From the NCBI RefSeq assembly GCF_006345805.1, contig NC_043007.1, forward strand, positions 76,880,001 through 76,944,000: DNA of 64,000 bases. The letters run 5' to 3'. This DNA comes from Octopus sinensis. Its lineage: Eukaryota. The notes beneath the pieces were generated by a model, which searched no databases, was not told the DNA's origin, and worked only from the letters and a program-made list of their open reading frames with translations. The first letter of the stretch is position 1. Every line of letters starts with the position of its first letter. This document shows positions 1 through 43,157 of the stretch, in pieces. The position numbers and the translations under genes are program-made.

Positions 1-405
1 TCTCACTTTTCACAAGTAACTGTAAACTATTGTTTCGTTGTATTGAATGTAGTGCTTCTCCCTTTTGATACTAATCTGCATGAAATTGCTTCTGGCTCTG
101 TAGTACAAATGTCTCGTTTTCAAAAGTTCTGAATTAAAATCTTCCACCAAACCTTTGTCATAATTTATGTTACTAACACTAAGTTACTTTACTAAATTCT
201 TTGTTATATTTAGAATTAATTGAAAGAAATACAGAGCATCTCAACAGAAATATGATAACAAAAGAATTAAGCATACACACAAACTGGTTATGAGAAAGTT
301 GTTAAATTTTGTAGAGTTCTGTTCGTTTAACTATATTTTTCTAATATCTACATGTAAATTTATATGCATCCCAAGTATAATTCATTTAACTGTTCTTCTT
401 TTTAG

Positions 406-567
406 GATACTGTTGAATATTTAGTGACTGGTAACAAGATGCAAAGATGTAAGATATGTAAACAATTTAAGGTTGCTTCAACATCTGCTTCACCCAAAAT
501 GATCAGTGGACCCCAAGAGACCAGACAACTTGGAGAAATTGATATAGACCTTTCTAAACAAGAACAG
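406..567 (+). CDS. Gene A repeat exon 1 (54 codons, phase 0-0): DTVEYLVTGNKMQRCKICKQFKVASTSASPKMISGPQETRQLGEIDIDLSKQEQ
   Basis: Polypyrimidine tract plus tttag|GAT acceptor and CAG|gtaggt donor; 162 nt open frame; homologous to four downstream exons. Confidence 0.8.
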
Positions 568-739
568 GTAGGTTTATATCATATTTTATCTCTATCCAGA
601 TTAACGTTGTCATCAAGATCTCTTTCTTGTGTATGCATGTATATATATGCACCAAAAACCAAGGAACCATTTTTTAGGTATTCTGGGCCTAAAACAGGGG
701 ACTCGATGGCATCAACCAAATGTGAGATCCCAAAGATTA

Positions 740-2215
740 GAAATATCTTGCATAAAACCCTGTCAAGCTAACAAACCAAATTTCTCTCATAAGGACTGAA
801 GTTCACCCCAACACCACAAAAGTTGAATTTAAATGAGATGCAGAACAATGTCCAGGAATTCTATAGAAAACTTTGAGTCACTGAAGAAGTATTTGATAAA
901 GAAATTAATGATCATTCAATACTTCATAATAAAACCAACTATAATCTGACAAAAGGGAGAAACCAAACTCTGGATAAACTTCATGATTTGGTATCCAATT
1001 TCCCCTATAATTTACTCCCTCATTGGAAATTGAAAACAAATACAAGCTGAGAAGAATGGGAAATCATTAATGATCTCAAGGATGATTATAATATGGTTAT
1101 CAAACAAGCTGATAAAGGGAGTTCTGTAGTCATCATGGACAAGGACAATACATAAACACTACCCTAACCCTCCTTCAAGACAATACCTACTACAAAAAAA
1201 TCAACAGTCAATCTAAAATAATGACAAAGTTTACTACCCTCATCTATCAGTTCCAACAATATTTAATGGAAAAGAAAAATTTGACTGCAAACCCAGCAAC
1301 TTTTATGGACTTCCAAAAATCCACAAGAATGAAGCCATAAATGAAGCATGTAGCAGATATACTTCTTTAGTCATTAATATTCCACATCCAAGAGATCTCA
1401 AAGTGAAGCCAGTTGTGGCTGGTCTGTCCTGTGAGATACACAAACTGAGTAACTTCATTGACATCCTCCTAAAACCTATTCTTCAACATATGCTGAGCCT
1501 CACAAGAGATGACCTGAACTTTTTAAACCATATCCTGAACAAAACCAGCATAAACTCTCCTTTGGTCTCATTCAACATAATAAATCTCTACACCTCAATT
1601 CCTCATCAATACAGAATAGAAGCTATATAATTTTGGATGGAAAAATTCCCAAAGGATCCTGACCTAATTGGAAAAGGATTTATCATTGTGAAACTGAAAT
1701 TCATCCTAACTTCTTTAATTTCAATGAAAACACCCAAAGACAAAAATCTGTAACTGCAATCCAAATCTGATTTAAAAAAATATAAACTGCAACTAAAATC
1801 CTATAATAACACACCAAAAAGAGAAAACCCAGTTTATTCACGGAAAACAGCCAGAGACAACAGATATAAGTTGAAGAGTTTAAGTAACAGGCTTTGTCAG
1901 GGATTCAAAACTCCAAACTACTGTACAATAACACCTTACACCTCATATATATGTGTATGTGTGTACTTTTTAGCAATAGTCTTGAGACAGAGTGCCTACA
2001 AATAAGTTGTAAATATATTTATGGATATAGCCATATATTTAACCTTATTGTGGAATGTTTAAACTATCAAGATCTCTTTTTGTAGAATGATCTGAAGAAG
2101 AACTCAACTAAATTTCACCTGGTTATTACCATTGGTAATATCAGCTGTGTTTATTTTATCTCTTCTATAAACTGTTACGTGTCTCATTTTTTCACAAGTA
2201 ATTGTAAACTAGTCA
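740..2215 (+). mobile_element. Degenerate Penelope-like retroelement fragment
   Basis: GLKFTPTPQ (~790), IKQADKGSSVVIMDKD (~1100), FYGLPKIHK (~1305) and KPVVAG...LVSFNIINLYTSIP (1403-1630) are PLE reverse transcriptase motifs; many stops and frameshifts. Confidence 0.75.
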
Positions 2216-2829
2216 AGTTGTTCATCATCATCCTATCATTCAACCATGGTAGTGGTTGAATATATTCTTAAGTCCACCATTTCATCAATCACAGCAGCTT
2301 CCAAGCTTCACCACTAATTCAGTTCTCAACTAAATTGCAAACTGTTAATTGCTTTAAAGAGGACACCTCCTCAGCTACACTTTGGCCTAAATAGTTTGAT
2401 ATTTGGTTCAGTAGAAAAACAGTTACATCAAAATATCTGCAACCTCAAAGGAGGCAATAAGGCAGATATTCATCTTCAATTAACATAAATTTTTAAATTT
2501 TAAATTAAAAGTATACTTTTCTTTGGCTTAAATGATAGCAAAATGCATGAGGAATTCAGAATTGCTAGTTGCATTGAACAAAACTGAGTAGAAAATGAGT
2601 TATGAGATAAAATGTTACAAAAATTAATGTCAGTAAGTAAGGGAGTAACGCTTAAGCAATAAGAATAAAGAATATATTTCTAAAATGAATGTTTACATTC
2701 TAAGTCGGCGAGCTGGCAGAAGCCTTAGTGCATTGGGTGAACTGCTTAACAGTATTTCGTCTGTCTTTACATTTTGAGTTCAAATCCGACTTTGACGTAC
2801 GGATTCTCTTTTACTCTTTTACTTTTTTC

Positions 2830-3178
2830 AGTCATTTCACTGTGGCCATGCTGGAGCACTGCCTTTAGTTCAGCAAATCGACCCCAGGACTTATACTTTG
2901 TAAGCTTAGTACTTATTCTATTGGTCTCCTTTGCTGAACTGCTAAGTTACAGGAACGTAAACACACCAGCATTGGTTGTCAAATGATGTTGTGAGGACAA
3001 ACACAGACACACAAACATACACACACACACACACACACACATATACGACAGGCGTCTTTCAGTTTTCATCTACCAAATCCACTCACAAGGCTTTGGTCAG
3101 CCCGAGGCTATAGTAGAAGACACTAACCCAAGGTGCCATGCAGTGGGACTGAACCTGGAACCACACAGCCACTCCTAC
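2830..3178 (-). mobile_element. tRNA-derived SINE family A; further copies at ~6165-6550(-), 7700-8100(-), 9475-9850(-), 10265-10670(-), 11590-11850(-), 31400-32060(+), 35090-35475(+), 35533-35700(+), 36340-36790(+), 37845-38240(-), 46370-46770(-), 48740-49075(-), 50852-51220(+), 57105-57490(-), 61447-62030(+)
   Basis: Recurrent ggcgcaggagtggctgtgtggtaag...ggttcagtccc head (Pol III A/B-like boxes), ggcaccttgggcaagtg CORE-like segment, internal (TA/TG)n and cagcatggccgcagtcaaatgactgaaac tail. Resembles described octopus SINEs; subfamily not assigned. Confidence 0.85.
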
Positions 3179-4622
3179 ATTTAATTTATTTTTTTTAACT
3201 AAACACTTTCAAACTTCCGATACTAGTAGAATGTGTCACATAGAACAGGGTTTACTTTTAACGTTTTTGACAAATTTTGTATTTTAGAAGTTATTTCGTC
3301 AGAAGTTACAGAGTGACAATGGACAAATTCGTGTTTGATAAGTGCCAATACAAGAAACTCTCAGCTTTTGATTTACTCTCTAACTTCTGCTGATGATATA
3401 TATACATATTACACATATGTGTAAAAAAAATCTCATCACGCAATCGAACCAATGAAAGACCTCTACCAGTTGCTCGACATGCTAAAAATAGCAGCCAAAG
3501 TATCCCCCTATCTAAATCACATGAATATTAAAACTTATTTTATTATAGTTTACAAATAACCCTACTTATTTAAGTAGAATTTGGCTAATTTACTACCTTA
3601 AATACAGAAAAAAGTGATTAATTAGACAAACTTACAAATTAGCTGAACAGTTTTGAACAAATTTAAAAGATGAGAACTGTAAACGAGTGATAAATTAGAA
3701 GAACTGGCATTCTTTGCTGCAATATTTTAAGTAAAAGGTTTCTTATTCTTTACTAGAAGTAATAGCTTGTCCTATACTTTTACAGGTGTAATAACTTGTC
3801 CTGTACTTTTCCAGGTTTATAATCTTAAGAATATTTCTTTTCATGCTTGCATTTTTCCATGTAATAACATCTGCTTTCTATGCTAGTATAAGTTGGATGG
3901 TTTGATAGGAGTTGACAAGCCAGATGACTTTGCCAAGCCTCGCTGCTTGCTTTAACATAGTTTCTGTGGCTGGATACACTTCTCAGTGTCAGCTTCTTTA
4001 CAGAATGCAATGGGTGCTTTTTATATAGTACCTGCACCAGTGAGGTCACCAAATAACTTGCAAGACAAGTAATCCTCAACTAAGTGGGGGTTAGTGTTGA
4101 GGAGGTGGCTTAGTGCCAGGGGATGAGAGGTTAGAGTATGAATAGAGGTACAGAAATAGATATCTCGCCGTAAAAGAGATACATGGCTATCTCAGATGGA
4201 AAAAGAGAGGGAGGAGAGAGAGAAGATGGCGAAGAAGGTAAGTTGAGGTATATATTCAAGTTACAGGGAAATGCATACAATTGAAATGGTACAGGGAATT
4301 GGATGGGGTGATGTTGCAGGTAAGTTTATGAGAGTGCAAAAGGTGAGTAGGAGATAGAGGGGAAGAGAATGCAGTGAGTGAACATAGGTCGTGGGGGAGT
4401 TGGAAGATAAGTTGTGAGAGAGAGACTCATCAGGGACAGATTGTATGCAGGGGTGTAGACATAAATGACATGCCTTTAGGGCCTCATTTTTACTTAGATG
4501 GACGGATTTTAGTTTATTTTGTAGAATTCTGTTTAATAGCAAAAATAATGCATTTTCTTTAAATAGGCAATTCAATTTTTTTACAACCCAAGTTTAATTT
4601 ATATAAATTGATTTCTTTTTAG

Positions 4623-4766
4623 GATACTGTTAACTACACAGTTGCTGGTAGTAAGATGGAAAGATGTATGATATGTAATAATTTAAAACTTGCTCTAACA
4701 TCTGCTTCACCCGAAGAGATCAGTGAACCCCAAGAAATCAGCAGAGATCTTGCTAAACAAGAACAA
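4623..4766 (+). CDS. Gene A repeat exon 2 (48 codons): DTVNYTVAGSKMERCMICNNLKLALTSASPEEISEPQEISRDLAKQEQ
   Basis: ttttag|GAT acceptor, CAA|gtaggt donor; clear nucleotide homology to exon 406-567 with an in-frame 18-nt difference. Confidence 0.8.
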
Positions 4767-5912
4767 GTAGGTGAAATAAATTAGTCTTTTCAATTTATTT
4801 AACAAAGAGAGCTTTATGTTTTAACCATTTGCAGAGGTCAGTAAATGTATGGTTATTAAATGTACATTTTCAAATTCATTTACAAATTACATATGCAACA
4901 TCTTCATCATTATTTAACACCCATGTGCCATGTTGACATCGGCTGGACATCCACTACTACTCACTTCATACCCTGAGATATCACCTGAACACCACTATTT
5001 ATCCCTTTGGAGATGCTACTGATTCATTCTCACTCTCTCCTGTAAATGTGAGTAGTCCTGTAGTCCCTCTATAAGGACCAGCTCTACCAAGATCCTTTCA
5101 CTCAAACCTGACACTCTCACTGCTGCCAGTGGCACAAACATTAGTGCCCAGTAGATACTGTAAAGTGGTTGGTGTTTGAAAAGGCATCCAGCTGTAGATA
5201 CCATGCAGAAGCAGACATTAGAGCATGATGCTGTCTTTGAACCTATGAGATCCTGTCAGACTGTCCAATCCATGCCAGCATAGAACATTGATGTTAAATG
5301 ATGATGAAGTTATATATATATATATATATTTCAGGAAACATTTTAAACTCCAGGAAAGAAGTAATTAGTCAGTGCCCTCATCAAAGACGTTTCCTGCTAC
5401 AAGCTTGGGCTTCACCACCATTTGTTGAATAAAACTGTGACAGTATCTTTGAATATCACTATGATTGTAACTGATATAAGAGAGATAATACTGTCTATAC
5501 TGTAACACCTCTTGCATGGCCAGTCTAGATATATATCTTTTGTTTATAAACCTAACTGACCATGACATTTTTCTCTTTCCAGTTGTAAAGAGGTTATGTG
5601 TCTTTGACCATTTGAGTCTGATGAGTTGCCTGTATAGCTTTAACAATTAACTTCCTAAAAACATTTTGCTGCTCTAATCTTTTAGAGTGTGCTTCTTTTT
5701 CAGATATATGAACTACTGATGATTCATTACACTCTCTAGTTGCAGAGTGTTTTTCAAAAGGCCACTACATAGTCTGTGTTCTATCACTGTACTTCTGGCT
5801 CTGTGTTTCTACATAATCACAAAAGTTACTCTCTTGTATACTATGGAGTTATATGATCTTGGTTATTCTACAAAATATATATATTTATATATGTGCTTGT
5901 TTCATTTTAAAG

Positions 5913-6044
5913 TATCAAATACGTGGTAGTAATGTAGAAACATGTAATGCGTGCAGAGCCCTTGTGCCTTTTTCAACATTTGCTCAATCTAAAGAGACCG
6001 GTGAACCCCGTGAGATCAACATAGATGTTTCTAAACAAGAACAA
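5913..6044 (+). CDS. Gene A repeat exon 3 (44 codons): YQIRGSNVETCNACRALVPFSTFAQSKETGEPREINIDVSKQEQ
   Basis: ttttaaag|TAT acceptor, CAA|gtaagc donor; CxxC and EINID.SKQEQ conserved. Confidence 0.75.
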
Positions 6045-6750
6045 GTAAGCTTATAATCTTACATATTTTTGTCTTAGTTTGTATGGAGTGACATTATTAT
6101 TAAACATTAAAAGATATAAGGCTCTGGTTGGAAAAGCAGATGCTGTTAAAATTTTTATGTCGTTTACGTATTTTAGTCATTGGACTGTGGCCTTGCTAGG
6201 GCATTGAAGGGTTTAGTCAAACAAATTGAACCCTAGTACAATCTTTTTGTAAATATTAAATATGGTACTTATTTTATCTATCCCTTTTGCTGAACTGCTA
6301 AGTTGCAAACATATAAACAACTCAACACCAGCTGTCAAGTGGTGGTGGTGGGTGGTTGGGGTTGAGAATAAACACACACACACACAAGATGGACTTCCAC
6401 AATTTCTATCTACTAAATTCATTCACAAGGCATTGCTTGTCTTGGTACTATAGAAGAGACATTTACTCAGGAGGTGCCACACAGTGGGACTGAACCCCAA
6501 ATCACATGGTTGCAAAGTGAGCTTCTTAGCTTCTTAATCACACAACCATATTTAATATGTGCAAAGGATAATGCACATCAATTAAAAGTTTTTATTGTTT
6601 ATAATTGTGCAAACCAGTAATATCCTGGGGAAAAATTCATTATTTATCTGATGAAAGAGAGAGAGAGAGGGAGAGAGAAAGAGAGAGAGATTGTTATGGA
6701 TCTATTTTTACCTCAAAGATGAATGTATGTTTATTAAATGTACACTTGCA

Positions 6751-6954
6751 AATTCCAGGCAGTGACCTGAGTAATAATAATACCTTAGGAATGAGAACCC
6801 AGGTTGAAAATTTCCCCAAGACACCTGATGAAAGCTGGAGGGTATACAGCCGAAATGTTGTGTTAACAACAAACAGGATGAGGACAAATATCCATCAATT
6901 GTAAATAATGTAAATAATGTACATAATTCCTCATCTCTTAAATATAGAACTGTA
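6751..6954 (+). mobile_element. Short retroelement (family C): tRNA-head remnant, (AAT)n, body, minimal hammerhead and tail
   Basis: Shares attccag.cagtgacct-(aat)n and ccttaggaa.gagaacccaggtt...ccccaagacac with 58580-59480; its tail matches 57832-58020. Confidence 0.65.
6820..6864 (+). ncRNA. Minimal type I hammerhead ribozyme motif (PLE-type), slightly decayed
   Basis: GACAC-CUGAUGA-AA-GCUG(loop)CAGC-C-GAAA-UGUU-GUGUU; stem I GACAC/GUGUU; palindromic AACGUU decayed to AAUGUU. Confidence 0.55.
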
Positions 6955-6999
6955 CTTGTAAATTTGTCTAAAGCTTGTATGTAATATGTCTTATTTTAG

Positions 7000-7134
7000 G
7001 ATTCTGCTGAATATGTAGTGCCTGATGACACGAAGGAAATATGTGATATATGCAAAAATATGAAGTCTCCTTCAACACCCACTGCACCCACTCAACCCCA
7101 AGAGATCAACATAGACCTTGCTGAACAAGCAGAA
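7000..7134 (+). CDS. Gene A repeat exon 4 (45 codons): DSAEYVVPDDTKEICDICKNMKSPSTPTAPTQPQEINIDLAEQAE
   Basis: attttag|GAT acceptor, GAA|gtaagt donor; CxxC and PQEINIDL conserved. Confidence 0.8.
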
Positions 7135-7197
7135 GTAAGTTTATATTCTAACACAGTTGATCTAACTGTGCTTATAGTGAGTTTATTATTAAGTTAT

Positions 7198-7234
<37 letters not shown>

Positions 7235-7411
7235 AATTTTTTGCATAATAAGATAAAAAACTAAGGCTGTATAGATATTAGAGCATTTATAGATAGAAGG
7301 TCTTACAGCTGTTTCTAGGATATTTATTAATAATATCCCTTCATCGGAGACGGTGTACCTGACACCTTTGGGTCTCAATGACACCATTATCTCTCATGTA
7401 TACTTATACAT

Positions 7412-7445
<34 letters not shown>

Positions 7446-8097
7446 ATATATATACTGTATATATTTATATGTGTGTGTATATAATTTAAATAATGAGGGT
7501 GATAAATTGAATATTAATTCAATTAACATCAATTTAAAACCAGTAGCCTAGCATACAGAAAAATCTGAAAATTCAGAATAATTTTAATACATGCATATAA
7601 TAAGGGATGACCACTAAGTGTATAGTTCTATAAATTATATTGAATTGGAATGATTGTACTGAAGAGTCCATGGACGATGATTACGTATATATGCTCTTTA
7701 CTCTTTTACTTGTTTCAGTCATTTGACTGCGGCCATGCTGGAGCACCGCCTTTAGTCGAGCAAATCGACCCCGGGACTTATTCTTTGTAAGCCCAGTACT
7801 TATCCTATCGGTCTCTTTTTGCCAAACCGCTAAGTGACGGGGACGTAAGTAGACCAGCATCAGTTGTCAAGCAATGCTAGGTACAAACACAGACACACAA
7901 ACACACACACATACATATATATATATACACATATATACAACAGGCTTCTTTCAGTTTCCGTCTACCAAATCCACTCACAAGGCATTGGTCGGCCCGGGGC
8001 TATAGCAGAAGACACTTGCTCAAGATGCCACGCAGTGGGACTGAACCTGGAACCATGTGGTTGGTTAGCAAGCTACTTACCACACAGCCACTCCTGC

Positions 8098-8171
<74 letters not shown>

Positions 8172-8435
8172 GTGTTGTTTAATCCCTGCTCAACTCTGAT
8201 CAAACACACTTGTCTTACTGTTGCTTCCTGTTTCCCCCTTTCTTTTCACACTTTTCTGGTGAGCTGTAGGGCACATGAGCACTGGATACAATAATCTTTA
8301 AAAAATATACATTTGCAACAGAGGCAATATTAATACCAAGAGGTAATATTTATCCCTACTTAAACGTGGATGTTCTATTAGAACAAACTATACTGTGGTA
8401 GATACCATGAGAGAAACACTCATATGGGCTTTTGG

Positions 8436-8832
8436 TGCAAAATGTATACTTGTTTATATCACTAACAGGGGAAATAAATCCCTGCCATTTCCAGCACCAA
8501 GACCACCCGATCATGTTATTTTGACCTTCCTTGATCTTGTCAATGATGGAATAGACATTCGGCTGCTAGAAGTAGCATTGACTCATCTCCCTACCAGTGA
8601 TATATAGAATAACAGTTCTAGGATAGATGCTGGTGTCGCAATTAGCCAGTGAGCTTTTTAAAAAATGTATATCAGTGACAGAAGCACTGTTAATGTATAT
8701 ATCGCTGGCAGTTGAGTGTCCGTCATTGACAAGATCAAAGAAGGTCAAAATTGTATGATCTGGTGGTTTTGGCACTGGAGATGGCAGGGATTTATCTTCC
8801 TTCTGGTGATATAAACAAGAATACATTTTGCA
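8436..8832. repeat. Imperfect inverted repeat (arms ~8436-8616 and 8686-8832), probable old MITE
   Basis: Left arm tgcaaaatgtatacttgtttatatcac...gatcttgtcaatga is the reverse complement of the right arm with scattered mismatches and one indel. Confidence 0.8.
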
Positions 8833-9038
8833 ACAGCAGCCAATATGAGAGTGACTCTCATGGTATCTACCACAGTATAGCTTATTCTAATAGAACATCC
8901 ACATTTAAGTGGGGATTAATTATTGCCTCACAATAATCTCTCTCTCCCAATTTCTACACACACACATACACATGTGTATGTGTATGCATATGTATATGTG
9001 CATGGCTTTACGTGAACTACATATATATTTTATTTTAG

Positions 9039-9167
9039 GGTAGCACTAAATACTTCGTGACTAACGATAACAAGTACATTGATATCAATGCTGCTTCAAC
9101 ATCCAGAGTTGTCAAAGAGGTGTATCAACCCCAAGATATCAAAGTTCACTATGCAGAACCAGAACCG
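9039..9167 (+). CDS. Gene A repeat exon 5 (43 codons, CxxC lost): GSTKYFVTNDNKYIDINAASTSRVVKEVYQPQDIKVHYAEPEP
   Basis: tattttag|GGT acceptor, CCG|gtaggt donor; Y.V and PQDI motifs align with the other repeats. Confidence 0.7.
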
Positions 9168-10671
9168 GTAGGTTCATGATCTAATATATTCATATTCATA
9201 GAAACTTTTTTATTTACTTATTGTTATATATATTAGTTATTTATGGTTTTGTTATTTGGCACCAAGTGAGCTCTGATTGAGTAGAGCTATTATCAAAAGT
9301 TATTCCAACTGTGACCATCACCCATATTTTATTTCAGGTATAATGTATCTATTGTTACACTATTTAATGTTTAATATCTCTGAAGATGGTAGGGTGTTAA
9401 CTTCAGGGAAATTCGCCTGCAGTTTTTATGCAGGGCTATATTGAAGTTCCTTCATTGATCTTTTATCTTCTTTTACTTGTTTCAGTCATTGGACTGTGGT
9501 CATGCTGGGGCACCACCTTGAAAGATTTAGTCAAACAAAGTGACTTCAAGACTTATTTTGTTGATCACTTTTATTAAACCGCTAAGTTACTGGAACATAA
9601 ACAAACCAACACCAATTTTCAAGCAATGGTGAGAAACAAATACAAAGGCACAGACAGAAAGACACACACACACACATACACACACACACACACAATAAGT
9701 GTCTTTCAGTTTCCATCTATCAAATTCCTCTCAAAGCTTTGGTTGGCCAAAGGCTATAGCAGAAGACATTTGCCCTAGGTGTTATGCAGTAGAAGTGACC
9801 TCAAGACCACATAACTGGTAAGCAAACATCTTAATCACACAGCCACACCTGATGAAGTGTCTGTGTGTGTGTGGAACATCTGAGATCTTCATTAAGAAAT
9901 TTTGATGCTTAAATTTCAAGGATTAATTTGTGAGCTATCCTTGAGCCTCACAAAGTAGCTCAGCCTAACAACTGCATTAGTTTGCATTTATCTGTCATAG
10001 CTGCAACAGCCATTATAACCAAAGAGGCTTGTCAAATCCAAGATATCACTGTTCACTATGCAAGTAATCATTGAACATTGACTCCTTTTATATTCAAATT
10101 TTAAAGGGGTTAAAATCTTTTTCCTTCCACTGTGAAAAATAAATAGTATCTTGGTGTCTCTATGGTGTCAGTGTTATAGTGTATGTTTGTGGTAGCCATG
10201 GAATGTCAACATTCATACCCATGATGCACACACACATGCATGTATATATATATATATATATATCTTTTACTTGTTTCAGTCATTTGACTGTGGCCATGCT
10301 GGAGCACTGCCTTTAGTCAAGTAAATCGACCCCAGGACTTATTCTTTGTAAGCCTAGTACTTATTCTATCGGTCTCTTTTGCCAAACTGCTAAGTTACGA
10401 GGACGTAAACACACCAGCATTGGTTGTCAAGCGATGTTGGGAGGACAAACACTGACACACAAACACACACACACACACAACACACACACACACACACACA
10501 TATATACGATGGGCTTCTTTCAGTTTCCGTCTTCCAAATCCACTCACAAGGCTTTGGTTGGCCCGAGGCTATAGTAGAAGACACTTACCCAAGGTGCCAC
10601 GCAATGGGACTGAACCCGGAATCATGTGGTTGGTAAGCAAGCTACTTACCACACAACCACTCCTATGCCTA

Positions 10672-10714
<43 letters not shown>

Positions 10715-10814
10715 TTAGGGAGTATAACTCCAAACTTACAGGGAAAAATTCAATTTAGTATTAAATCAAATTTCACAATATAAATATATAAACACACACA
10801 CACATTGATTTTGC

Positions 10815-11000
10815 CATGATAGATCGCTAGCCACTGCACACATTTTTTTCTCTCCTTGTTTCTTTCTGTGTTCCTTTCTGTGAAAGAGCGTAGGCTCAAA
10901 ATGTTAAAGACTTTTTCAATTCACGAGCATTATACTAAGCCATCTGTTTGTCGTCTACGCCACCTGTCTTCATCTTTTTTTTTTGTGAATTCTCCCTATA
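10815..11000 (+). mobile_element. PLE-like 3' end with a degenerate hammerhead-like motif (10874-10909)
   Basis: CUUU-CUGUGAA-A-GAGC-GUAG-GCUC-AAAAUGUU-AAAG; ends in ctata(ta) like the 48530-48700 element. Confidence 0.4.
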
Positions 11001-11104
11001 GATATATATATGCACATATATAAATGCACACACTCCTACTCAGCTGATATATACTATCTTTTGAGAAATATTGAATTATAAAATGTAAAATCGATATTTT
11101 TCAG

Positions 11105-11410
11105 GCCTGTCATTATTGTTTGGTGGACGACATTGATGATCTCGTAGATGTTAGCAGTTCTTTTCTCACCTTCGAAGAGCCTTGTTGCTGTTGCAGTAAA
11201 CCACATAGTTTCGAAACTGAATTAACTCGGATCCTCGAAGATCATATTGCTCAGCCATGTTGTGCTCATATTGTAACAAGGAACCTAGCAAGCATGTGTG
11301 AAGACAACCTTCTTTCATGCAGTTCTAGTATATCTTCCATGGAGGACTTTGATTTTTTATTTACCAACCATGCAGACAGTTTTGATCTTAAATTTACAAA
11401 TATTAATTGA
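11105..11410 (+). CDS. Gene A terminal exon: ACHYCLVDDIDDLVDVSSSFLTFEEPCCCCSKPH...DLKFTNIN*
   Basis: tttttcag|GCC phase-0 acceptor in frame with ORF 11120-11410; stop followed by AATAAA at 11421. Linkage to the upstream exons is inferred. Confidence 0.6.
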   Translation, partial: ACHYCLVDDIDDLVDVSSSFLTFEEPCCCCSKPHSFETELTRILEDHIAQPCCAHIVTRNLASMCEDNLLSCSSSISSMEDFDFLFTNHADSFDLKFTNIN

Positions 11411-11420
11411 GTATAAAAAT

Positions 11421-11426
11421 AATAAA
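11421..11426 (+). terminator. Candidate polyadenylation signal of gene A
   Basis: AATAAA 11 nt after the stop codon. Confidence 0.45.
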
Positions 11427-11869
11427 AGAAACTATACTTTCTTTTTCTGACTTGTATTTATTTTTTTCCATTTTCTACTTTACTTGGCTGCTTTACCTGT
11501 CTCTTTTCTCCTCCCCCCAGTGCACATCCCAGACTAGAAAGTTACAAACAAACAATGTAACATTATTTTTTTTTTTGTTTCACTCACTGTAGTCATGCTG
11601 GGGCACTACCTTGAAGAGTTTAGTTGAATAAATCGACCCCAGTAATTTTAAGTCTGGTAGTTATTCTATCAATATCATTTTGCTGAATTGCTAAGTTATG
11701 AGAACAGAAAACAAACAACTTCTATTGTTAACTAGAGGTGGGGGACAAACACAACACAATGGCACACACACACACACACACACACGACAGTATGACAGAC
11801 TTCAACAGAATTTCCGTCAACCAAATTCACTCACAAGGGATTACTTGAGTCACAGTTATTCTAGAAGAT

Positions 11870-13136: not shown

Positions 13137-13209
<73 letters not shown>

Positions 13210-13353
13210 ATATATATATATACATATATATATAATATATATGTATGTATTATATATACATATATAATATATATATATATTATGTATATATATACATATA
13301 TATATATATATATAGTATGTATATATATACATATATATATATATATATGTATG

Positions 13354-13396
<43 letters not shown>

Positions 13397-13755
13397 ATAT
13401 ACATATATATATGTATGTATATAATATACATATATATATATATATAATATATACATATATATATCTATATATATATATATATGTATTATATATACATATA
13501 TATATATGTATGTATATATATATACATACATGTATATATATATATTATATATAATATATACATATATATTATATATGTATGTATGTATATATATATACAT
13601 ATATATATATATATTATGTATATATATATCATATATATATATATATATGTATATTTATATATATATATATTATATATGTATGTATATATATATACATACA
13701 TGTATATATATATTGTATGTATATATATACATATATGTATATATATATATGTATG

Positions 13756-13801
<46 letters not shown>

Positions 13802-13811
13802 TATATGTATG

Positions 13812-13844
<33 letters not shown>

Positions 13845-13862
13845 GTATGTATATATTTATAC

Positions 13863-13899
<37 letters not shown>

Positions 13900-13922
13900 C
13901 ACACACATATATATATATATTA

Positions 13923-13990
<68 letters not shown>
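13137..13990. repeat. ~850-bp (TA)n-rich microsatellite array with TG/CA interruptions
   Basis: Directly visible; source of the spurious YI-repeat ORFs. Confidence 0.95.
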
Positions 13991-13993
<3 letters not shown>

Positions 13994-17102: not shown

Positions 17103-20100
17103 TGTTGTTATATATATATATAATGTATTGAGTATTAAAGGAAGTAGTGAGTACTTAGTATGAAAGATTAAGAAAATGAGAGAGACTGAAACTACGTGTT
17201 AACGATACAAGATACTTTATTCGACTGCCGTTGTTGTACAAGTTAATTGTTTTGGCGGGAAACAAAGTGAAAGTCCTTTTATCAAGGGAGACAATGGGCG
17301 ACGTTGATTGTTCATGTTTGTTGTGATGATTATATAACATCTTCCTTTTTTTTTTATTTATACTTATTTTTTTTTTATTATCATCTGTATCTACAGGGAA
17401 TAATTATTCGTCGTCCACTTTTTGTGGTTTTATTATTTTGTAGTGTTGAATTCTGTAGTTGTGCTGTTTTTGTTTTTTCATGCGTGTTTGTTGACTTTGG
17501 AAATATATTTTCATAATCTAATTCTTCTGTTATGCGAACGTGTTCGTTTGTTTTAAGAATATGTTGTCTATTTCGTTTGACTGTATTACCTTCCTCTGTT
17601 ATTACTAAGTATGACGAGGTTGCTCTAGTTTTTTAATTATTTTGCCCCTTCTAAACCAATTGTTGTTAAACTTAATTCTAACCGTGTCGTGTGGTTTTAA
17701 CTCTGGGAGTTCTGTTGTAATGTTCGATTTCTTCTTTTCGTGAGGCCTGATACCAATTTTGTCGTGTAGTATGTTTGGGAGATTTGTTCGCAATGTTCTA
17801 TTCATTATTTGATTTGCAGGGGATGGTGCACCATTTTGTAATTTAGTCGTGCGTAATGCTAAGAGCGCTAACTGAGGTTCTTCGTCACTTTTGAATGCCT
17901 TTTTTAGCGTCTTTTTTATTGTCTGTATATTTCTCTCAACCATGCCATTCGCTTGATGATAATGCGGGCTTGTCTTCGTGTGATGAAAATGCCAATTTTT
18001 TGCAATTTTTTGAATTCAGCCGAATTGAATTCTGGACCGTTGTCACTTACAACTGTTTGCGGAATTCCGAATTTAGCAAAAGTTTCTTTTAATTTTTTGA
18101 TTACGGTTTTTGACTGGCAATCATTTATTTCGTGTAGATCAAAAAATCTTGTTGTATAGTCAATAATTGTGACATACAAATTTCCAGACAGGTGAAATAC
18201 GTCTGTACCCACTTTGGTCCATGGTGTAGTAGGTATTTCATGATTTATTAGTGGTTCGGCTGCTTGTTGATTTTTGTAGTCAATGCAGTATGAGCATGTG
18301 TTAATCATGTCTTTGATTTGAGCGTTAATGCCGGGCCAGTATATACATTCCTTCGCTCTCTCTATGCATTTTTCGATACCCATGTGTCCGGTATGTATTT
18401 CCTGTAGAGCTTCTCTACGTAATGACTTAGGTACAATTATTCTTGAACCTTTTAGAACGAGACCATTGACGATTGATATTTCATCACGAACAGATACGAA
18501 TGGTTTGATGTTTATTGGTATTTTGTCTTTTGGGGGCCATTCTGTTCTTGTAAATGTGACGAGTGTCTGTAGAGACGGGTCGTCTGCAGTGGCTTCTTTA
18601 TACTCGTTTAATTTAGTGTCGGTTATGGGGTAATTTTTTATTACTGCATGAATGTGCGATTTCATATCTTCGTCTGGTACTTCTGGAGTATTTTGCTCAA
18701 GGTATGCACGTGATAGGGTATCTGCAACAATTGATTCTTTACCAGGTATGTGGTTTAGGTCAAAATCATATCTTTGTAATGTTAGTAGAAATCTTTGGAT
18801 TCTGGGGGGGGGGGGCATTTAGTGATCGATTTTTTGAATATTTGCTTCAACGGTTTATGGTCATTTTCGATTCTGAAATGAGTTCCGTATATAAACTGAT
18901 GAAATTTCTTGCATGCGAAAACTATACTGAGAGCTTCGCTCTCTATCGGACAGTAGTTTTGTTCCGCTTGAGTTGTTGCACGAGATGCAAACGAAACAGG
19001 TAGCCATCTTTCGTTGTGTTTCTGCTCAAGTATCGCTCCGAGCCCATGCTTACTAGCATCTGTAGTTATTTTTATTGGTAGATCTGGATCATAAATTGTA
19101 GCACTGGTTTTCTGGTAATCATTTCTTTTAGCTTTTTTATTGCTTCGATTTGTGGTTTGTCGAATGACCATAACGTGTCACTCTGTAGAAGCTGGCGCAA
19201 TGGTGCTGTGACTTCGGAGTAATTAGATAAAAATTTACATAGGTAATTTGTCATACCTAGGAATCTTTGTAATTCTTTTTTACTTGTTGCAGTGGCATGT
19301 GAATGATTGCTTGTACCTTGGTTGGATCTTGTTTTATCCCTTCGCTGGTTAATATATGCCCAAGGTACTTGATTTGTGATTCATAGAAGATACACTTTGA
19401 TTTATTTAACTTTAATCCGTGCTTTCGGATTCGATCGAAAACTTGTTGTAGTCTATTTGTGTGTTCTTCTAAAGTGTTGGACCAGATTATGATGTCATCC
19501 TGTGAATTTCTTGCTCCTTCTATGCCCTCTATTATTTTTGAAATTTCTTTTTGGAAAACTTCACTGGCGCTGTGAATTCCAAAGGGTAGTCGTGTGAAGC
19601 GATACCTTCCAAAAGGTGTGTTGAACGTTAAAAGATGGGAGCTTTCTTCGTCAACTGGAATTTGCCAGTATCCATTAGATGCATCGAGTTTTGAAAAATA
19701 TTTAGGGTTATGCATTTGTGCAAAAATGTCCTCCGCTGTAGGGAGTTTGAAATGTTGCCTTTTTATGGCTTTGTTTAGATTCTTGGGGTCTAAACAGAGT
19801 CGGAGTTTTCCGTTGGCTTTTTCAACGATGACTAGGGAATTTACCCAGTCTGTAGGTTCACTAACAGGTTTTATGATATCTAATTCTGTCATTCTTTTTA
19901 ATTCTTTGTTGAGTTTTTCTTTTATAGAAAAAGGAACCGATCTTGGTGGATGAATTACAGGAGTTATTTGTGGATCCACTGTGATATGATGTGTTATTGA
20001 CAAAGTGCCGATTTCTCCGAAACAGTCTTCATATTTTTCTAATATGTCGTTTGTGTTCGACGAATTTATTTTTGAAATTCTCTGAATCAGGTTTAGATCT

Positions 20101-21640
20101 TTAGCTGTCTTTGCATCTATAACTGCGTGCGAGTTTGTTTTTGCAACAATGAATTTTATTTGCTTTGATAATTCTTTGTATTTAATGACTGCTGTGCATT
20201 TTCCTAGCACTTTTATAGCTGTGTTATTGTAAGCTGATAATCGAGTTGAGGTTTTTTGCAGTTGTGGTTTTGGAATTATATTTCTATATTCTCTGAATGG
20301 CAGTACGGTTACGTCTGCTCCTGTATCTATTTTGAATGTTACATTCGAGTTGTTCACTTTTAGTTCGACCGTCCAAATGTCTTTTGGAGTCTTGAACTTT
20401 TCGATTTTGTGCACGCGGGAATTATTTGCAGTGATCATTTCGAGTGCATGTGTATCGTCATCTGATTCATCGTCGGTATGTATCTCTACTTTATGTACAA
20501 ATTTTCTTGATTTGCACATTTTTGCATAGTGTCTTTGTTTCTTGCATTTTTCACATGTCTTGTGAAATGCTGGGCATTTATTTCTTTTGTGATTATAACC
20601 ACAATAGTGACAGTTAGTGACGTAGTGTTGACTTGGCGCTTGAAACTTCGCGGGCTTTCTGTCACTTCCGCCTTGTTCGTTTTGATGTCTGGATTGCATA
20701 TGGCGGGTTATTTGGGTTTTGGCGCCTTTTCTGTCGTGTTGACTATATACCCTCGAGATTTCGTTATCTCTTGTTTCGGATGTGGCATTTAGCATCCTTG
20801 ATTGGAGTCGTGTTTGCTCTGCACTCTGACCTGCTTGAATTGTTTTTTGTAGGTCTAAATTTGGTTCTCTCAATAATCTTTCTCTTAATCTCATGTCTCT
20901 GATTCCACATATCAGAATATCTTTGGTGAGACTGTCTGTGAGGTTGCCGAATTCGCACTGTTGTGCCTTTTGGCGCAACTCTACTACGTACTCATCGAAT
21001 TTTTGATGTTCCGCTTGTCCACATGTGAAGAATTTGTGTCTTAGGAAAGTTATGTTTTTCCTGGGTTCACAATGCATCGAATTTTTCGATTACTGTCTGA
21101 AGGTTCATTTCTTCGTCGGGTGAATCGAAATCCAGTGTGGAATGGATATCTCGGCCTTTAGAACCGATGCAAGTTAAAAACATTGAAGTTTTTACTTTGT
21201 CTGGCTTCATGTCACTTTCTGTTGCTATCAAAAAGAGATTGAATTCTTTTTTCCACTTTTTCCATGCTGCGGCTAGATTTTCCTGATTAAAGTCTAGGTC
21301 TTTTGGATGCGGTAAATTTTCCATTTCGTCTTTGAAGTATGATTTCAACTTCTTTTTTTCCTTTGGTTTCTGTATTTTTGGGTTCTTTTAGTATTCTGAC
21401 ACCATGTTGTTGTTATATATATAATGTATTGAGTATTAAAGGAAGTAGTGAGTACTTAGTATGAAAGATTAAGAAAATGAGAGAGACTGAAACTACGTGT
21501 TAACGATACAAGATACTTTATTCGACTGCCGTTGTTGTACAAGTTAATTGTTTTGGCGGGAAACAAAGTGAAAGTCCTTTTATCAAGGGAGACAATGGGC
21601 GACGTTGATTGTTCATGTTTGTTGTGATGATTATATAACA
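17103..21640 (-). mobile_element. Full-length, very young Ty3/Gypsy LTR retrotransposon (Mag-like), 4538 bp
   Basis: LTRs 17103-17339 and 21408-21640 (TG...CA) differ only in (TA)7 vs (TA)5; TSD ACACT at 17098-17102 and 21641-21645; PBS TGGTGTCAGAA (tRNA-Leu-like) at 21394-21404; PPT at 17340-17355. Confidence 0.97.
17381..21324 (-). CDS. Gypsy gag-pol polyprotein (Gag, two Zn knuckles, protease, RT, RNase H, integrase) with six frameshifts
   Basis: CHYCGYNH..CPA..KTCEKCKKQRHYAKMC; FKIDTGADV; LRLCLD, KLDASNGYWQ, LPFG, SQDD; TTDASKHGLGA, IESEAL; HTGHMGIEKC, VGTDVF, VSDNGPEF, MVERNIQT. The PR-RT-RH-INT order is Gypsy type. Confidence 0.93.
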
Positions 21641-39326: not shown

Positions 39327-39357
<31 letters not shown>

Positions 39358-39446
39358 TGAGAGAGTGAAGAGAGAGAGAGAGGGGGAAAGGGGAGAGAGA
39401 GAAATTAAAAGGGAGAGAGAGAGAGAGAGAGAGAGAGGGGGAAAGG

Positions 39447-39496
<50 letters not shown>

Positions 39497-39710
39497 AGAG
39501 AGAGAGAGAGGGGGGAAGGGGGAGAGAGAGAAATTAAAAGGGAGAGAGAGAGAAAGTGAAAGGGAGAGAGAGACAGAGAGAGACAGAGAAAGAAAAGGGA
39601 AAGGGGGAGAGAGAGAGAGAAATTAAAAGGGGGAGAGAGTGAGAGAGAGAGAGAGAGAAAAGAGACAGAGAGAGAAAGAGAAAGTAAAAGAGAGAGGGAG
39701 AGAGAGACTC
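39327..39710. repeat. (GA)n-rich compound microsatellite
   Basis: Directly visible, with a repeated gagagaaattaaaaggg subunit. Confidence 0.9.
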
Positions 39711-42700: not shown

Positions 42701-43157
42701 GCCTTAACAAGTGATATATTTCTCAAATTAAGGCGTCGAGCTGGCAGAAACGTTAGCACGCCGGGCAAAATGTGTGGCCGTATTTCGTCTGCCGTTACGT
42801 TCTGAGTTCAAATTCCGCCGAGGTCGACTTAAATAAGTACCAGTTACGCACTAGGGGTCGATATAATCGACTTAATCCGTTTGTCTGTCCTTGTTTGTCC
42901 TCTCTGTGTTTAGCCCCTTGTTGGTAGTAAAGAAATAGGTATTTCGTCTGATGCTACGTTCTGAGTTCAAATTCCGCCGAGGCCGACTTTGCCTTTCATC
43001 TTTTCGGGGTCGATTAGATAAGTACTAGTTACGCATTGGGGTCGATATAATCGACTTAATCCGTTTGTCTGTCCTTGTTTGTCCCCTCTATGTTTAGCCT
43101 CTTGTGGGCAGTAAAGAAATAAATATTTCTCAAATAAATCTTTTCTTCATTTAACAG

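What the first reader, a model, noticed from the sequence alone, without database searches (positions are those of the whole stretch)
406..11426. Unrecognised gene built from tandem, symmetric phase 0-0 CxxC exons
Five homologous exons have canonical GT-AG sites and lengths of 54, 48, 44, 45 and 43 codons, so every length change preserves frame, which argues they are real coding exons. Consensus is roughly D.V.Y.V.....CxxC...(S/T/P-rich)...PQEI.IDL.KQEQ. Amino-acid divergence between copies is high. Four carry CxxC and the terminal exon starts with CHYC. I do not recognise the family. Inference: pairs of CxxC could form C4 zinc sites, and symmetric exons allow cassette or combinatorial splicing, so this may be a lineage-specific modular protein. 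The 5' end lies before the window.
Basis: partly seen in the sequence, partly recalled or inferred. Interest (0 to 1): 0.72.

Follow-up and report, generated by a model that had tools for sequence, protein, structure and literature searches.

The report
Octopus BTB gene's tandem CxxC-repeat exons
These exons are real and form the 3' end of an already annotated but unstudied Octopus sinensis gene, a BTB-BACK protein whose tail is a chain of duplicated 43-54-residue repeats, most carrying a conserved cysteine pair, that has no detectable relatives outside the genus Octopus in the libraries searched.

Summary
Window 406-11410 (+) carries five phase 0-0 exons with AG/GT boundaries (54, 48, 44, 45 and 43 codons) and a 101-codon terminal exon beginning A-CHYC. 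E1-E4 are clearly homologous and each has one CxxC. E5 is only a marginal, cysteine-less family member.

The gene is not unannotated. The exons match RefSeq LOC118765495 of Octopus sinensis ("uncharacterized protein", 14 predicted isoforms, 1394-1656 aa) at 100%. The full protein has an N-terminal KLHL-type BTB+BACK module, about 750 residues with no recognised domain, 11-12 CxxC repeats (one per exon), and a cysteine-rich C-terminus. It has no Kelch propeller.

Orthologues turned up only in O. bimaculoides, O. vulgaris and one unidentified sequencing run (most likely another octopod). The repeat matches no Pfam family and no PDB sequence.

The zinc-site idea is untested. Among CxxC-bearing repeats the two cysteines and one glutamine are the only invariant columns, yet AlphaFold2 gives no confident fold (pLDDT 29-34). 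The repeats otherwise evolve at about the neutral rate.

My best reading is a CUL3-adaptor-like scaffold with a disordered, multivalent tail of splice-adjustable length. The gene identity is near certain; the mechanism is weakly supported.

The parts
406..567 (+). Repeat exon E1 (R7 of the array in O. sinensis isoform X1), 54 codons, phase 0-0, CKIC at 448-459. Skipped in RefSeq isoforms X7-X12 and X14. The internal TTTAAG|GTT at 466-474 is the junction of the hybrid repeat in X10.
4623..4766 (+). Repeat exon E2 (R8), 48 codons, phase 0-0, CMIC at 4665-4676. About 100 nt of upstream intron are still alignable with E1's.
5913..6044 (+). Repeat exon E3 (R9), 44 codons from the canonical AG (RefSeq: 46 codons from 5907). 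CNAC at 5943-5954. Weak aaAG acceptor. Its 5' part is frameshifted relative to O. bimaculoides. Skipped in isoform X4 and in the O. vulgaris model.
7000..7134 (+). Repeat exon E4 (R10), 45 codons, phase 0-0, CDIC at 7042-7053. It has a 9-nt in-frame indel relative to O. vulgaris.
9039..9167 (+). Exon E5 (R11), 43 codons, phase 0-0. A degenerate last repeat without CxxC. Identical in O. vulgaris and 86% identical in O. bimaculoides.
10000..10062 (+). Relic partial copy of E5 (57% identity over 21 codons). It is out of phase with the flanking AG/GT, so it is a pseudo-exon.
   Evidence: sequence read
11105..11410 (+). Terminal coding exon, 101 codons plus TGA. Cysteine-rich tail: CHYC at 11108-11119, then PCCCC, PCCAH and C..C. 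Identical in O. vulgaris and 87% identical in O. bimaculoides.
11421..11426 (+). AATAAA polyadenylation-signal consensus, starting 11 nt after the stop codon.

Best explanation
Identity (shown, about 0.97). The window holds the last six coding exons of Octopus sinensis LOC118765495. The encoded protein is about 1650 residues. It has an N-terminal KLHL-type BTB+BACK module, about 750 residues without a recognised domain, and an array of 11-12 repeats of 43-54 residues, each repeat encoded by its own phase 0-0 exon. It ends in a conserved cysteine-rich tail. The array grew by tandem duplication of an exon together with its proximal intron.

Mechanism (inferred, about 0.3). The BTB-BACK head dimerises and may dock to a cullin-3-type ligase. 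The repeat array takes the place of the Kelch propeller as a flexible, multivalent partner-binding tail. Each repeat offers a CxxC half-site that can bind a metal, most likely zinc, only by pairing with a second CxxC from another repeat or from the other chain of the dimer. Each repeat also offers an S/T-P-rich stretch and an acidic EIDIDLAKQEQ motif. Because every repeat exon is symmetric, skipping changes the number of repeats (6 to 11 in the full-length RefSeq models; 8 in the truncated X13, which lacks the tail) without breaking the frame. This tunes valency and length.
For: All window exons are 100% identical to XP_036363630-44. Pfam finds BTB at 7e-20 and BACK at 3e-16. The closest solved structures are KEAP1, KLHL3, KLHL11 and KBTBD2 BTB-BACK modules, at 5e-18 to 5e-16. 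In the syntenic O. vulgaris locus all 12 full repeats are separate AG/GT phase 0-0 exons. The 20 nt flanking each exon are as conserved among paralogues (0.62-0.66) as the exons themselves (0.60-0.65), against a background of about 0.30. The reading frame is kept through a 9-nt indel in E4, and through an inferred roughly 7-nt deletion in E3 that is compensated by a shifted acceptor. In 28 CxxC-bearing repeats from three species the only invariant columns are the two Cys and one Gln. The Cys codons vary synonymously (TGT/TGC) and the two middle residues vary. Both Cys are lost together in R2 and E5. The isoforms differ by whole repeats. E5 and E6 show 0 changes in 435 nt against O. vulgaris, where introns differ by 0.84%.
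Against: AlphaFold2 gives no confident structure for the spliced 335 residues (mean pLDDT 29) or for a di-repeat with a 25-row repeat alignment (pLDDT 34, only low-confidence beta-hairpins). E1-E4 differ from O. vulgaris by 7 substitutions, all non-synonymous, plus an indel, so most repeat residues evolve at about the neutral rate. Paralogue dN/dS is 0.3-1.4 and noisy. One repeat has only two metal ligands and no conserved His. The number of CxxC motifs differs between species and isoforms, so intramolecular pairing cannot always be complete. The Glu of the cullin-3 contact motif phi-x-E aligns with His90. The isoforms are Gnomon predictions and no reads were seen.
Confidence: 0.55

Rival explanations
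1. The repeat array is a largely unconstrained, disordered spacer between the BTB-BACK head and the conserved C-terminal tail. The CxxC pair and the exon-end motifs persist through recent duplication, gene conversion or splicing-signal constraints, not through metal binding. Only frame and length matter.
For: No confident fold. Seven non-synonymous and no synonymous changes in E1-E4 against O. vulgaris, at or above the intron rate. The repeats are the least conserved region against O. bimaculoides: 81% identity, versus 87% for the middle region and 97% for BTB-BACK. R2 and E5 do without cysteines. The best-conserved stretches sit at the exon ends (DTV.Y, DLAKQEQ), where exonic splicing signals lie.
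Against: The old, divergent repeats R1, E3 and E4 share only 28-44% identity with other O. sinensis repeats, yet keep both Cys, with synonymous codon changes and variable middle residues. The central repeats are not homogenised with E2-E5, and 1:1 orthology with O. bimaculoides holds for R1-R4 and E2-E5. Gene conversion therefore cannot explain the retention.
Confidence: 0.3
2. The cysteines serve lipidation or redox chemistry rather than zinc. CxxC and the PCCCC string would be palmitoylation or thiol-switch sites that tether or regulate a membrane-associated scaffold. The N-terminus MGTRFSQ fits the N-myristoylation consensus.
For: Cysteine strings in the terminal exon (PCCCC, PCCAH) and the MG...S N-terminus followed by basic residues can be read directly from the sequences. 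The motif interpretation comes from my own knowledge, not from a tool.
Against: No transmembrane region or lipidation evidence was tested. CxxC in a beta-hairpin context, as in the low-confidence model, is more typical of zinc knuckles.
Confidence: 0.08
3. The exons are transposon-derived or pseudo-exonic sequence wrongly joined by gene predictors, and are not translated.
For: The introns are full of SINE copies and retroelement debris. All isoform evidence is computational.
Against: No copies of the unit lie elsewhere in the window, and none occur outside this gene in 1.84 billion representative proteins. There is no Pfam transposon hit. All 12 full repeat exons in O. vulgaris are in frame with canonical sites, and all indels preserve the frame or are compensated. 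Annotations from three different sources (RefSeq for O. sinensis, UniProt for O. bimaculoides, GenBank for O. vulgaris) use the same boundaries.
Confidence: 0.03

Closest known systems
KLHL / KBTBD family (BTB-BACK-Kelch substrate adaptors of cullin-3 ligases, e.g. KEAP1, KLHL3, KLHL11, KBTBD2)
   Same: The N-terminal BTB and BACK domains match Pfam above its gathering scores. They align over about 240 residues with the solved BTB-BACK modules of these proteins. O. vulgaris annotators even named the protein 'actin-binding IPP' (KLHL27).
   Different: There are no Kelch repeats at all. The propeller is replaced by about 750 residues without a domain, an 11-12-unit CxxC repeat array and a cysteine-rich tail. 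The Glu of the phi-x-E cullin contact aligns with His.
Tandem exon-duplication arrays of disordered repeats with differential exon skipping (titin PEVK exons are the textbook case; own knowledge)
   Same: One short repeat per symmetric exon. The duplicated unit includes proximal intron sequence. Predicted isoforms differ in the number of repeats included. No stable fold is predicted.
   Different: There is no sequence relation. These repeats carry an invariant cysteine pair, and the array sits in a BTB-BACK protein restricted to the genus Octopus.
Rad50 zinc hook and similar inter-chain CxxC half-sites (own knowledge)
   Same: A lone CxxC supplies only two of the four zinc ligands, so a site must be completed by a second CxxC from another segment or chain. 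The BTB head would provide a dimer.
   Different: There is no homology and no coiled coil around the motif. The motif is repeated 9-10 times per chain. Metal binding has not been shown.
ZF-CXXC domain (PF02008) and classical C4 zinc fingers or zinc ribbons
   Same: They contain CxxC motifs.
   Different: Those domains hold 4-8 ligands within about 30-50 residues. Here each repeat has only two Cys and no conserved His, and there are no Pfam or PDB sequence hits.

Membership tests
KLHL/KBTBD-type BTB-BACK proteins | BTB/POZ domain (PF00651) | tested here: met
   Residues 46-150 of the full-length protein, E = 7e-20, 71.6 bits against a cut-off of 20.5. This region lies upstream of the window.
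KLHL/KBTBD-type BTB-BACK proteins | BACK domain with 3-box (PF07707) directly after the BTB domain | tested here: met
   Residues 170-254, E = 3e-16. It aligns with KEAP1, KLHL3 and KLHL11 through residues 272-282.
KLHL/KBTBD-type BTB-BACK proteins | C-terminal Kelch beta-propeller | tested here: not met
   No Kelch family among the Pfam hits at E <= 0.1 for the 1610-aa protein. The C-terminal 335 residues have no Pfam family near significance (weakest listed hit E = 0.17) and no PDB sequence hit at E <= 1.
Cullin-3 substrate adaptors (functional class) | phi-x-E contact motif in the BTB domain and physical binding to CUL3 | tested here: inconclusive
   The motif (M-S-E in KLHL3, L-R-E in KEAP1) aligns with I88-N89-H90: the hydrophobic residue is kept and Glu is replaced by His. 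Binding itself cannot be tested with these tools.
ZF-CXXC (PF02008) | Two CGxCxxC clusters, eight zinc ligands in about 50 residues | tested here: not met
   No Pfam hit. There are two Cys per repeat.
Self-contained C4 zinc finger / zinc ribbon | Four Cys/His ligands within one compact, foldable unit | tested here: not met
   Only C15 and C18 are conserved in a repeat, with no conserved His. The di-repeat model has pLDDT 34.
Inter-chain CxxC zinc hook (Rad50-like) | CxxC at the apex of an antiparallel coiled coil; zinc shared between two chains | tested here: not met
   No coiled coil is seen around the motif: the models show a short helix or a beta-hairpin there, both at low confidence. Metal sharing cannot be tested here.
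Tandem exon-duplication repeat arrays with cassette splicing | One repeat per exon, symmetric phase, and homology extending into the flanking introns | tested here: met
Tandem exon-duplication repeat arrays with cassette splicing | Transcripts that include different subsets of the repeats | tested here: inconclusive
   The 14 RefSeq isoforms differ by whole repeats. They are predictions, no reads were available here, and template switching between conserved exon ends could mimic skipping.

The most novel reading that the evidence does not exclude
The array could be a splice-tunable 'metal zipper'. CxxC half-sites on the two chains of a BTB dimer (or on neighbouring repeats) would pair through zinc, turning a disordered tail into a rod or a cross-linked mesh. 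Its length and valency would be set by which cassette exons are included. This would be a lineage-specific replacement of the Kelch propeller in a cullin-3-type adaptor, born within octopods by exon duplication.
Probability: 0.12. Interest if true: 0.6.

Novelty: new variant of a known kind. Interest (0 to 1): 0.35.

Why it matters
If the mechanism holds, this would be a clear, datable example of a new protein module built from a single exon by tandem duplication inside an old scaffold family, with the repeat count adjustable by splicing. It would also add a cephalopod-specific member to the cullin-3 adaptor repertoire. As it stands it is a correctly spotted, already annotated, uncharacterised gene. 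The practical value is a cleaner annotation: the E3 boundary, a thirteenth truncated copy, hybrid-repeat isoforms that need checking, and the likely mis-predicted 3' end of the O. vulgaris model. It also defines a repeat family that is not yet in Pfam.

Tried and rejected
- **Pfam on the tail:** The spliced 335-aa peptide and the terminal exon gave nothing significant (best E = 0.17, a Cypovirus domain, which I take as chance).
- **PDB sequence search of the tail:** No hit at E <= 1.
- **AlphaFold2:** I ran it on the spliced tail with 3 orthologues and on a di-repeat with 25 repeat pairs. Both gave pLDDT around 30, so a fold search would be meaningless and I did not run one.
- **Representative-library search:** The only second hit was P0002 (E = 1e-4, 28% identity), a repetitive protein that matched only short stretches of the query (best stretch 60-111). 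I rejected it as a probable low-complexity match.
- **Wider homologue searches:** A three-orthologue profile and the first 622 residues found only Octopus sequences plus one fragment from a Logan assembly. The word-seeded method may miss distant squid orthologues.
- **Exact look-up of isoform X1:** It returned no contig. The O. vulgaris orthologue did and served as the genomic comparison.
- **Paralogue dN/dS:** Values were 0.3-1.4 on about 27 synonymous sites per pair, too noisy to use.
- **Literature:** There were no papers for the locus or protein accessions, and nothing specific for octopus BTB or exon duplication.
- **Rejected hypotheses:** Transposon or dispersed-repeat origin, ZF-CXXC, and a self-contained C4 finger.
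- **Left unexplained:** I could not account for RefSeq's extra 'LK' at the start of E3 by any canonical splice site. I also could not explain the 'R5b' hybrid repeat from the O. vulgaris sequence.


Full report
**1. Observation**

| Exon | Window coordinates | Codons | Boundaries / notes |
|---|---|---|---|
| E1 | 406-567 | 54 | ttttag \| gtaggt |
| E2 | 4623-4766 | 48 | ttttag \| gtaggt |
| E3 | 5913-6044 | 44 | ttaaag \| gtaagc |
| E4 | 7000-7134 | 45 | ttttag \| gtaagt |
| E5 | 9039-9167 | 43 | ttttag \| gtaggt |
| Terminal (E6) | 11105-11410 | 101 + TGA | begins A-CHYC |

- AATAAA follows at 11421-11426.
- All five repeat exons are phase 0-0. They are open only in frame 0 among the sense frames.
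- E1-E4 carry CKIC, CMIC, CNAC and CDIC.
- E1-E4 are mutually significant by tblastn inside the window, at E = 3e-15 to 4e-3. An HMM built solely from other repeats of the gene finds them at 2e-30 to 1e-10.
- E5 is not significant on its own (E about 0.3-0.45). It belongs to the series by position, phase, length and a few motifs (Y.V, STS, QPQ[ED]I).
- A 21-codon out-of-phase relic of E5 lies at 10000-10062.
- No other copy exists in the 64 kb on either strand.

**2. What the gene is**

- The spliced 335-residue peptide was searched against 1.84 billion representative proteins. It hit one cluster at 2e-260 and nothing else credible.
- That cluster is Octopus sinensis LOC118765495, "uncharacterized protein", isoforms X1-X14, XP_036363630-44, 1394-1656 aa.
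- All window exons occur in it at 100% identity. The window is therefore O. sinensis DNA, and the gene is annotated but unstudied. No paper mentions the locus.
- Pfam finds BTB (residues 46-150, 7e-20) and BACK (170-254, 3e-16), and no Kelch or other domain.
- The closest solved structures are the BTB-BACK modules of KEAP1, KLHL3, KLHL11 and KBTBD2, at 5e-18 to 5e-16.
- In those alignments the cullin-3 contact motif phi-x-E corresponds to I88-N89-H90. The hydrophobic residue is kept, but Glu is replaced by His.
- After about 750 residues with no domain comes the repeat array, then the cysteine-rich tail encoded by the terminal exon. That tail contains CHYC, PCCCC, PCCAH and C..C.

**3. The array and its origin**

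- The orthologous O. vulgaris locus (L002, OX597824.1) contains the whole 57-kb gene. Window 1-7232 aligns to it at 98.6% and window 8128-11785 at 97.2%.
- A repeat HMM finds 13 copies there, all on the coding strand.
- Twelve copies are full repeats, each a separate exon with AG/GT and a length divisible by three. One (L002 36112-36231) is a 5'-truncated copy not used in the O. vulgaris model.
- The window holds the last five of these.
- O. bimaculoides (A0A0L8GHP2, 1714 aa) has 12 repeats in its model. O. sinensis X1 has 11.
- R1-R4 and E2-E5 have clear 1:1 orthologues between O. sinensis and O. bimaculoides. The central 54-residue repeats (R5-R7/E1) are 78-83% identical to one another and less cleanly paired. 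The array therefore predates the split of these species, and its middle has turned over more recently.
- The 20 nt on either side of the exons are as similar among paralogues (0.62-0.66) as the exons themselves (0.60-0.65), against about 0.30 further out. Motifs such as gttatcaag recur about 45 nt downstream.
- E1 and E2 still share about 100 nt of upstream intron.
- The duplicated unit was thus an exon plus its proximal intron.

**4. Constraint**

- Frame preservation is strong evidence for translation. All 12 full repeat exons are in frame. E4 differs between O. sinensis and O. vulgaris by a 9-nt indel.
- E3 shows a compensated shift. Its O. bimaculoides orthologue reads KSIKYVVAGSNVETC. In the window the SIKYVV reading is in another frame and runs into a stop. 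I infer a deletion of about 7 nt, rescued by a shifted acceptor.
- Among 28 CxxC-bearing repeats of three species, the only invariant columns are the two Cys and one Gln. The Cys codons vary TGT/TGC, and the intervening residues vary (KI, MI, NA, DI, NE, KV, and others in O. bimaculoides such as RI, KL and DT).
- R2 and E5 have lost both Cys together.
- Otherwise the repeats are poorly constrained.
  - Against O. vulgaris, E1-E4 show 7 substitutions in 564 nt, all non-synonymous.
  - E5 plus the terminal exon show 0 in 435 nt.
  - Introns differ by 0.84%.
- Against O. bimaculoides, identity is 97% in BTB-BACK, 87% in the middle, 81% in the repeats and 87% in the tail.
- Paralogue dN/dS is uninformative.

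**5. Splicing**

Decomposing the 14 RefSeq proteins into repeat units shows that they differ almost only by whole repeats.

| Isoform(s) | Difference from the full array |
|---|---|
| X4 | lacks E3 |
| X5 | lacks R3 |
| X6 | lacks R2 |
| X7 | lacks E1 |
| X8-X10 | lack R6 and E1 |
| X11, X12 | lack R6, E1, E2 and E3 |
| X14 | lacks R3 through E1 |
| X13 | ends after E2 |

- E3 has the only AAG acceptor in the series, all others being TAG. That fits E3 being the optional exon, both in X4 and in the O. vulgaris model.
- The exon ends are nearly identical between repeats (…AAACAAGAACAG | GATACTGTT…). Template switching by reverse transcriptase could therefore create the same in-frame deletions.
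- The hybrid repeat in X10 joins R5 to E1 at TTTAAG|GTT (window 466-474). The 'R5b' repeat in X2, X9 and X12 is another hybrid. Both are either intra-exonic splice events or such artefacts.
- RefSeq's two extra residues (LK) at the start of E3 require a non-AG acceptor in both species. This remains unexplained.

**6. Structure and the zinc idea**

- AlphaFold2 on the spliced tail (3-row alignment) gives mean pLDDT 29. On a di-repeat with 25 repeat pairs it gives 34.
- The di-repeat model places each CxxC at the end of a beta-hairpin (TVEYLV / NKMQRC), but with no confidence.
- There is no Pfam zinc-finger family among the hits and no PDB sequence match.
- One repeat offers only two ligands, so any tetrahedral site must be shared between repeats or between the chains of a BTB dimer.
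- The evidence for metal binding is thus only the invariance and coupled loss of the Cys pair in a presumably cytosolic or nuclear protein. No signal peptide is evident; this localisation is inference.

**7. Mechanism and rivals**

- I commit to the following reading: a BTB-BACK (cullin-3-adaptor-like) dimeric scaffold whose propeller has been replaced by a disordered, multivalent tail. Its repeats carry a CxxC half-site, an S/T-P-rich stretch and an acidic EIDIDLAKQEQ motif, and their number can be changed by exon skipping.
- The gene identity is about 0.97. The mechanism is about 0.3.
- The main rival, at about 0.3, is that the array is mainly a spacer with little residue-level function.
- Lipidation or redox roles for the cysteines (about 0.08) and an annotation artefact (about 0.03) are less likely.

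**8. Comparison and novelty**

- By its head the protein belongs with the KLHL/KBTBD BTB-BACK proteins, but it fails their Kelch criterion.
- By gene architecture it resembles tandem exon arrays such as titin PEVK (own knowledge).
- The CxxC half-site logic resembles the Rad50 zinc hook (own knowledge), without homology or a coiled coil.
- It is not a ZF-CXXC domain or a classical C4 finger.
- The repeat and the tail have no detectable relatives outside the genus Octopus in the libraries searched. The word-seeded searches could, however, miss distant decapodiform orthologues.
- I rate it a new variant of a known kind, of moderate interest (0.35). The main corrections are that the gene is already annotated, that it has a recognisable BTB-BACK head, and that the zinc proposal remains untested.

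Noticed in passing
window 2806-3163, 7683-8108, 9459-9850, 10259-10676, about 11580-11850: There are at least five copies of a SINE-like element of about 350-400 nt inside the introns and just past the gene. The same family recurs in the O. vulgaris locus (L002 about 5996-6406, 11252-11661, 45776-46133, 52484-52874, 53306-53697). Many copies are flanked by (AT)n or (CA)n microsatellites.
   Followed up: partly
window 17916-21077, minus strand: Two adjacent long ORFs (606 and 300 aa) encode aspartyl protease, reverse transcriptase (RVT_1, 2e-26) and integrase (Integrase_H2C2 1e-15, rve 7e-8). This is the pol region of an LTR retrotransposon downstream of the gene.
   Followed up: partly
window about 700-1750 (intron between E1 and E2): Stop-riddled ORF debris (e.g. 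...ADKGSSVVIMDKDN...) looks like a decayed retroelement. It was not tested against any library.
   Followed up: no
L002 36112-36231 (O. vulgaris, upstream of the window's equivalent): This is a thirteenth, 5'-truncated repeat copy (CKICKNFQVASTSAPPKMISELQETIEPREIDIDLAKQEQ) with an intact donor. Its sequence equals the C-terminal half of the odd 'R5b' repeat in O. sinensis isoforms X2, X9 and X12. No canonical junction explains the hybrid in O. vulgaris.
   Followed up: partly
L002 54113-54415 versus protein P0017: The O. vulgaris genome encodes the full terminal exon, 100% identical to O. sinensis. The deposited O. vulgaris protein ('actin-binding IPP') leaves it midway for a different 10-residue end (YRVEDCRHNL). 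That model also skips E3 and the 40-residue exon before R1. These are likely annotation errors.
   Followed up: partly
full-length protein (P0015) residues 1-12, outside the window: The N-terminus MGTRFSQGRRKP fits the N-myristoylation consensus (Gly2, Ser6) and is followed by a basic patch. Together with PCCCC in the terminal exon, this hints at membrane association.
   Followed up: no
window 13139-13993; 39327-39707; 42265-42709; 54833-55150: Long simple repeats: (AT)n of about 855 nt, which explains the GC dip to 27% and the overlapping ORFs on both strands at 13.5-14.2 kb; (GA)n of about 380 nt, which explains the GC/AT-skew peak at 38-40 kb; a 230-nt unit repeated 1.9 times; and (ATT)n.
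   Followed up: partly
L001 (Logan SRR11869391 contig, 3457 nt): This contig comes from an unidentified sequencing run and carries the large middle exon of the same gene at 80% protein identity. The gene therefore exists in at least one further taxon, presumably an octopod.
   Followed up: no
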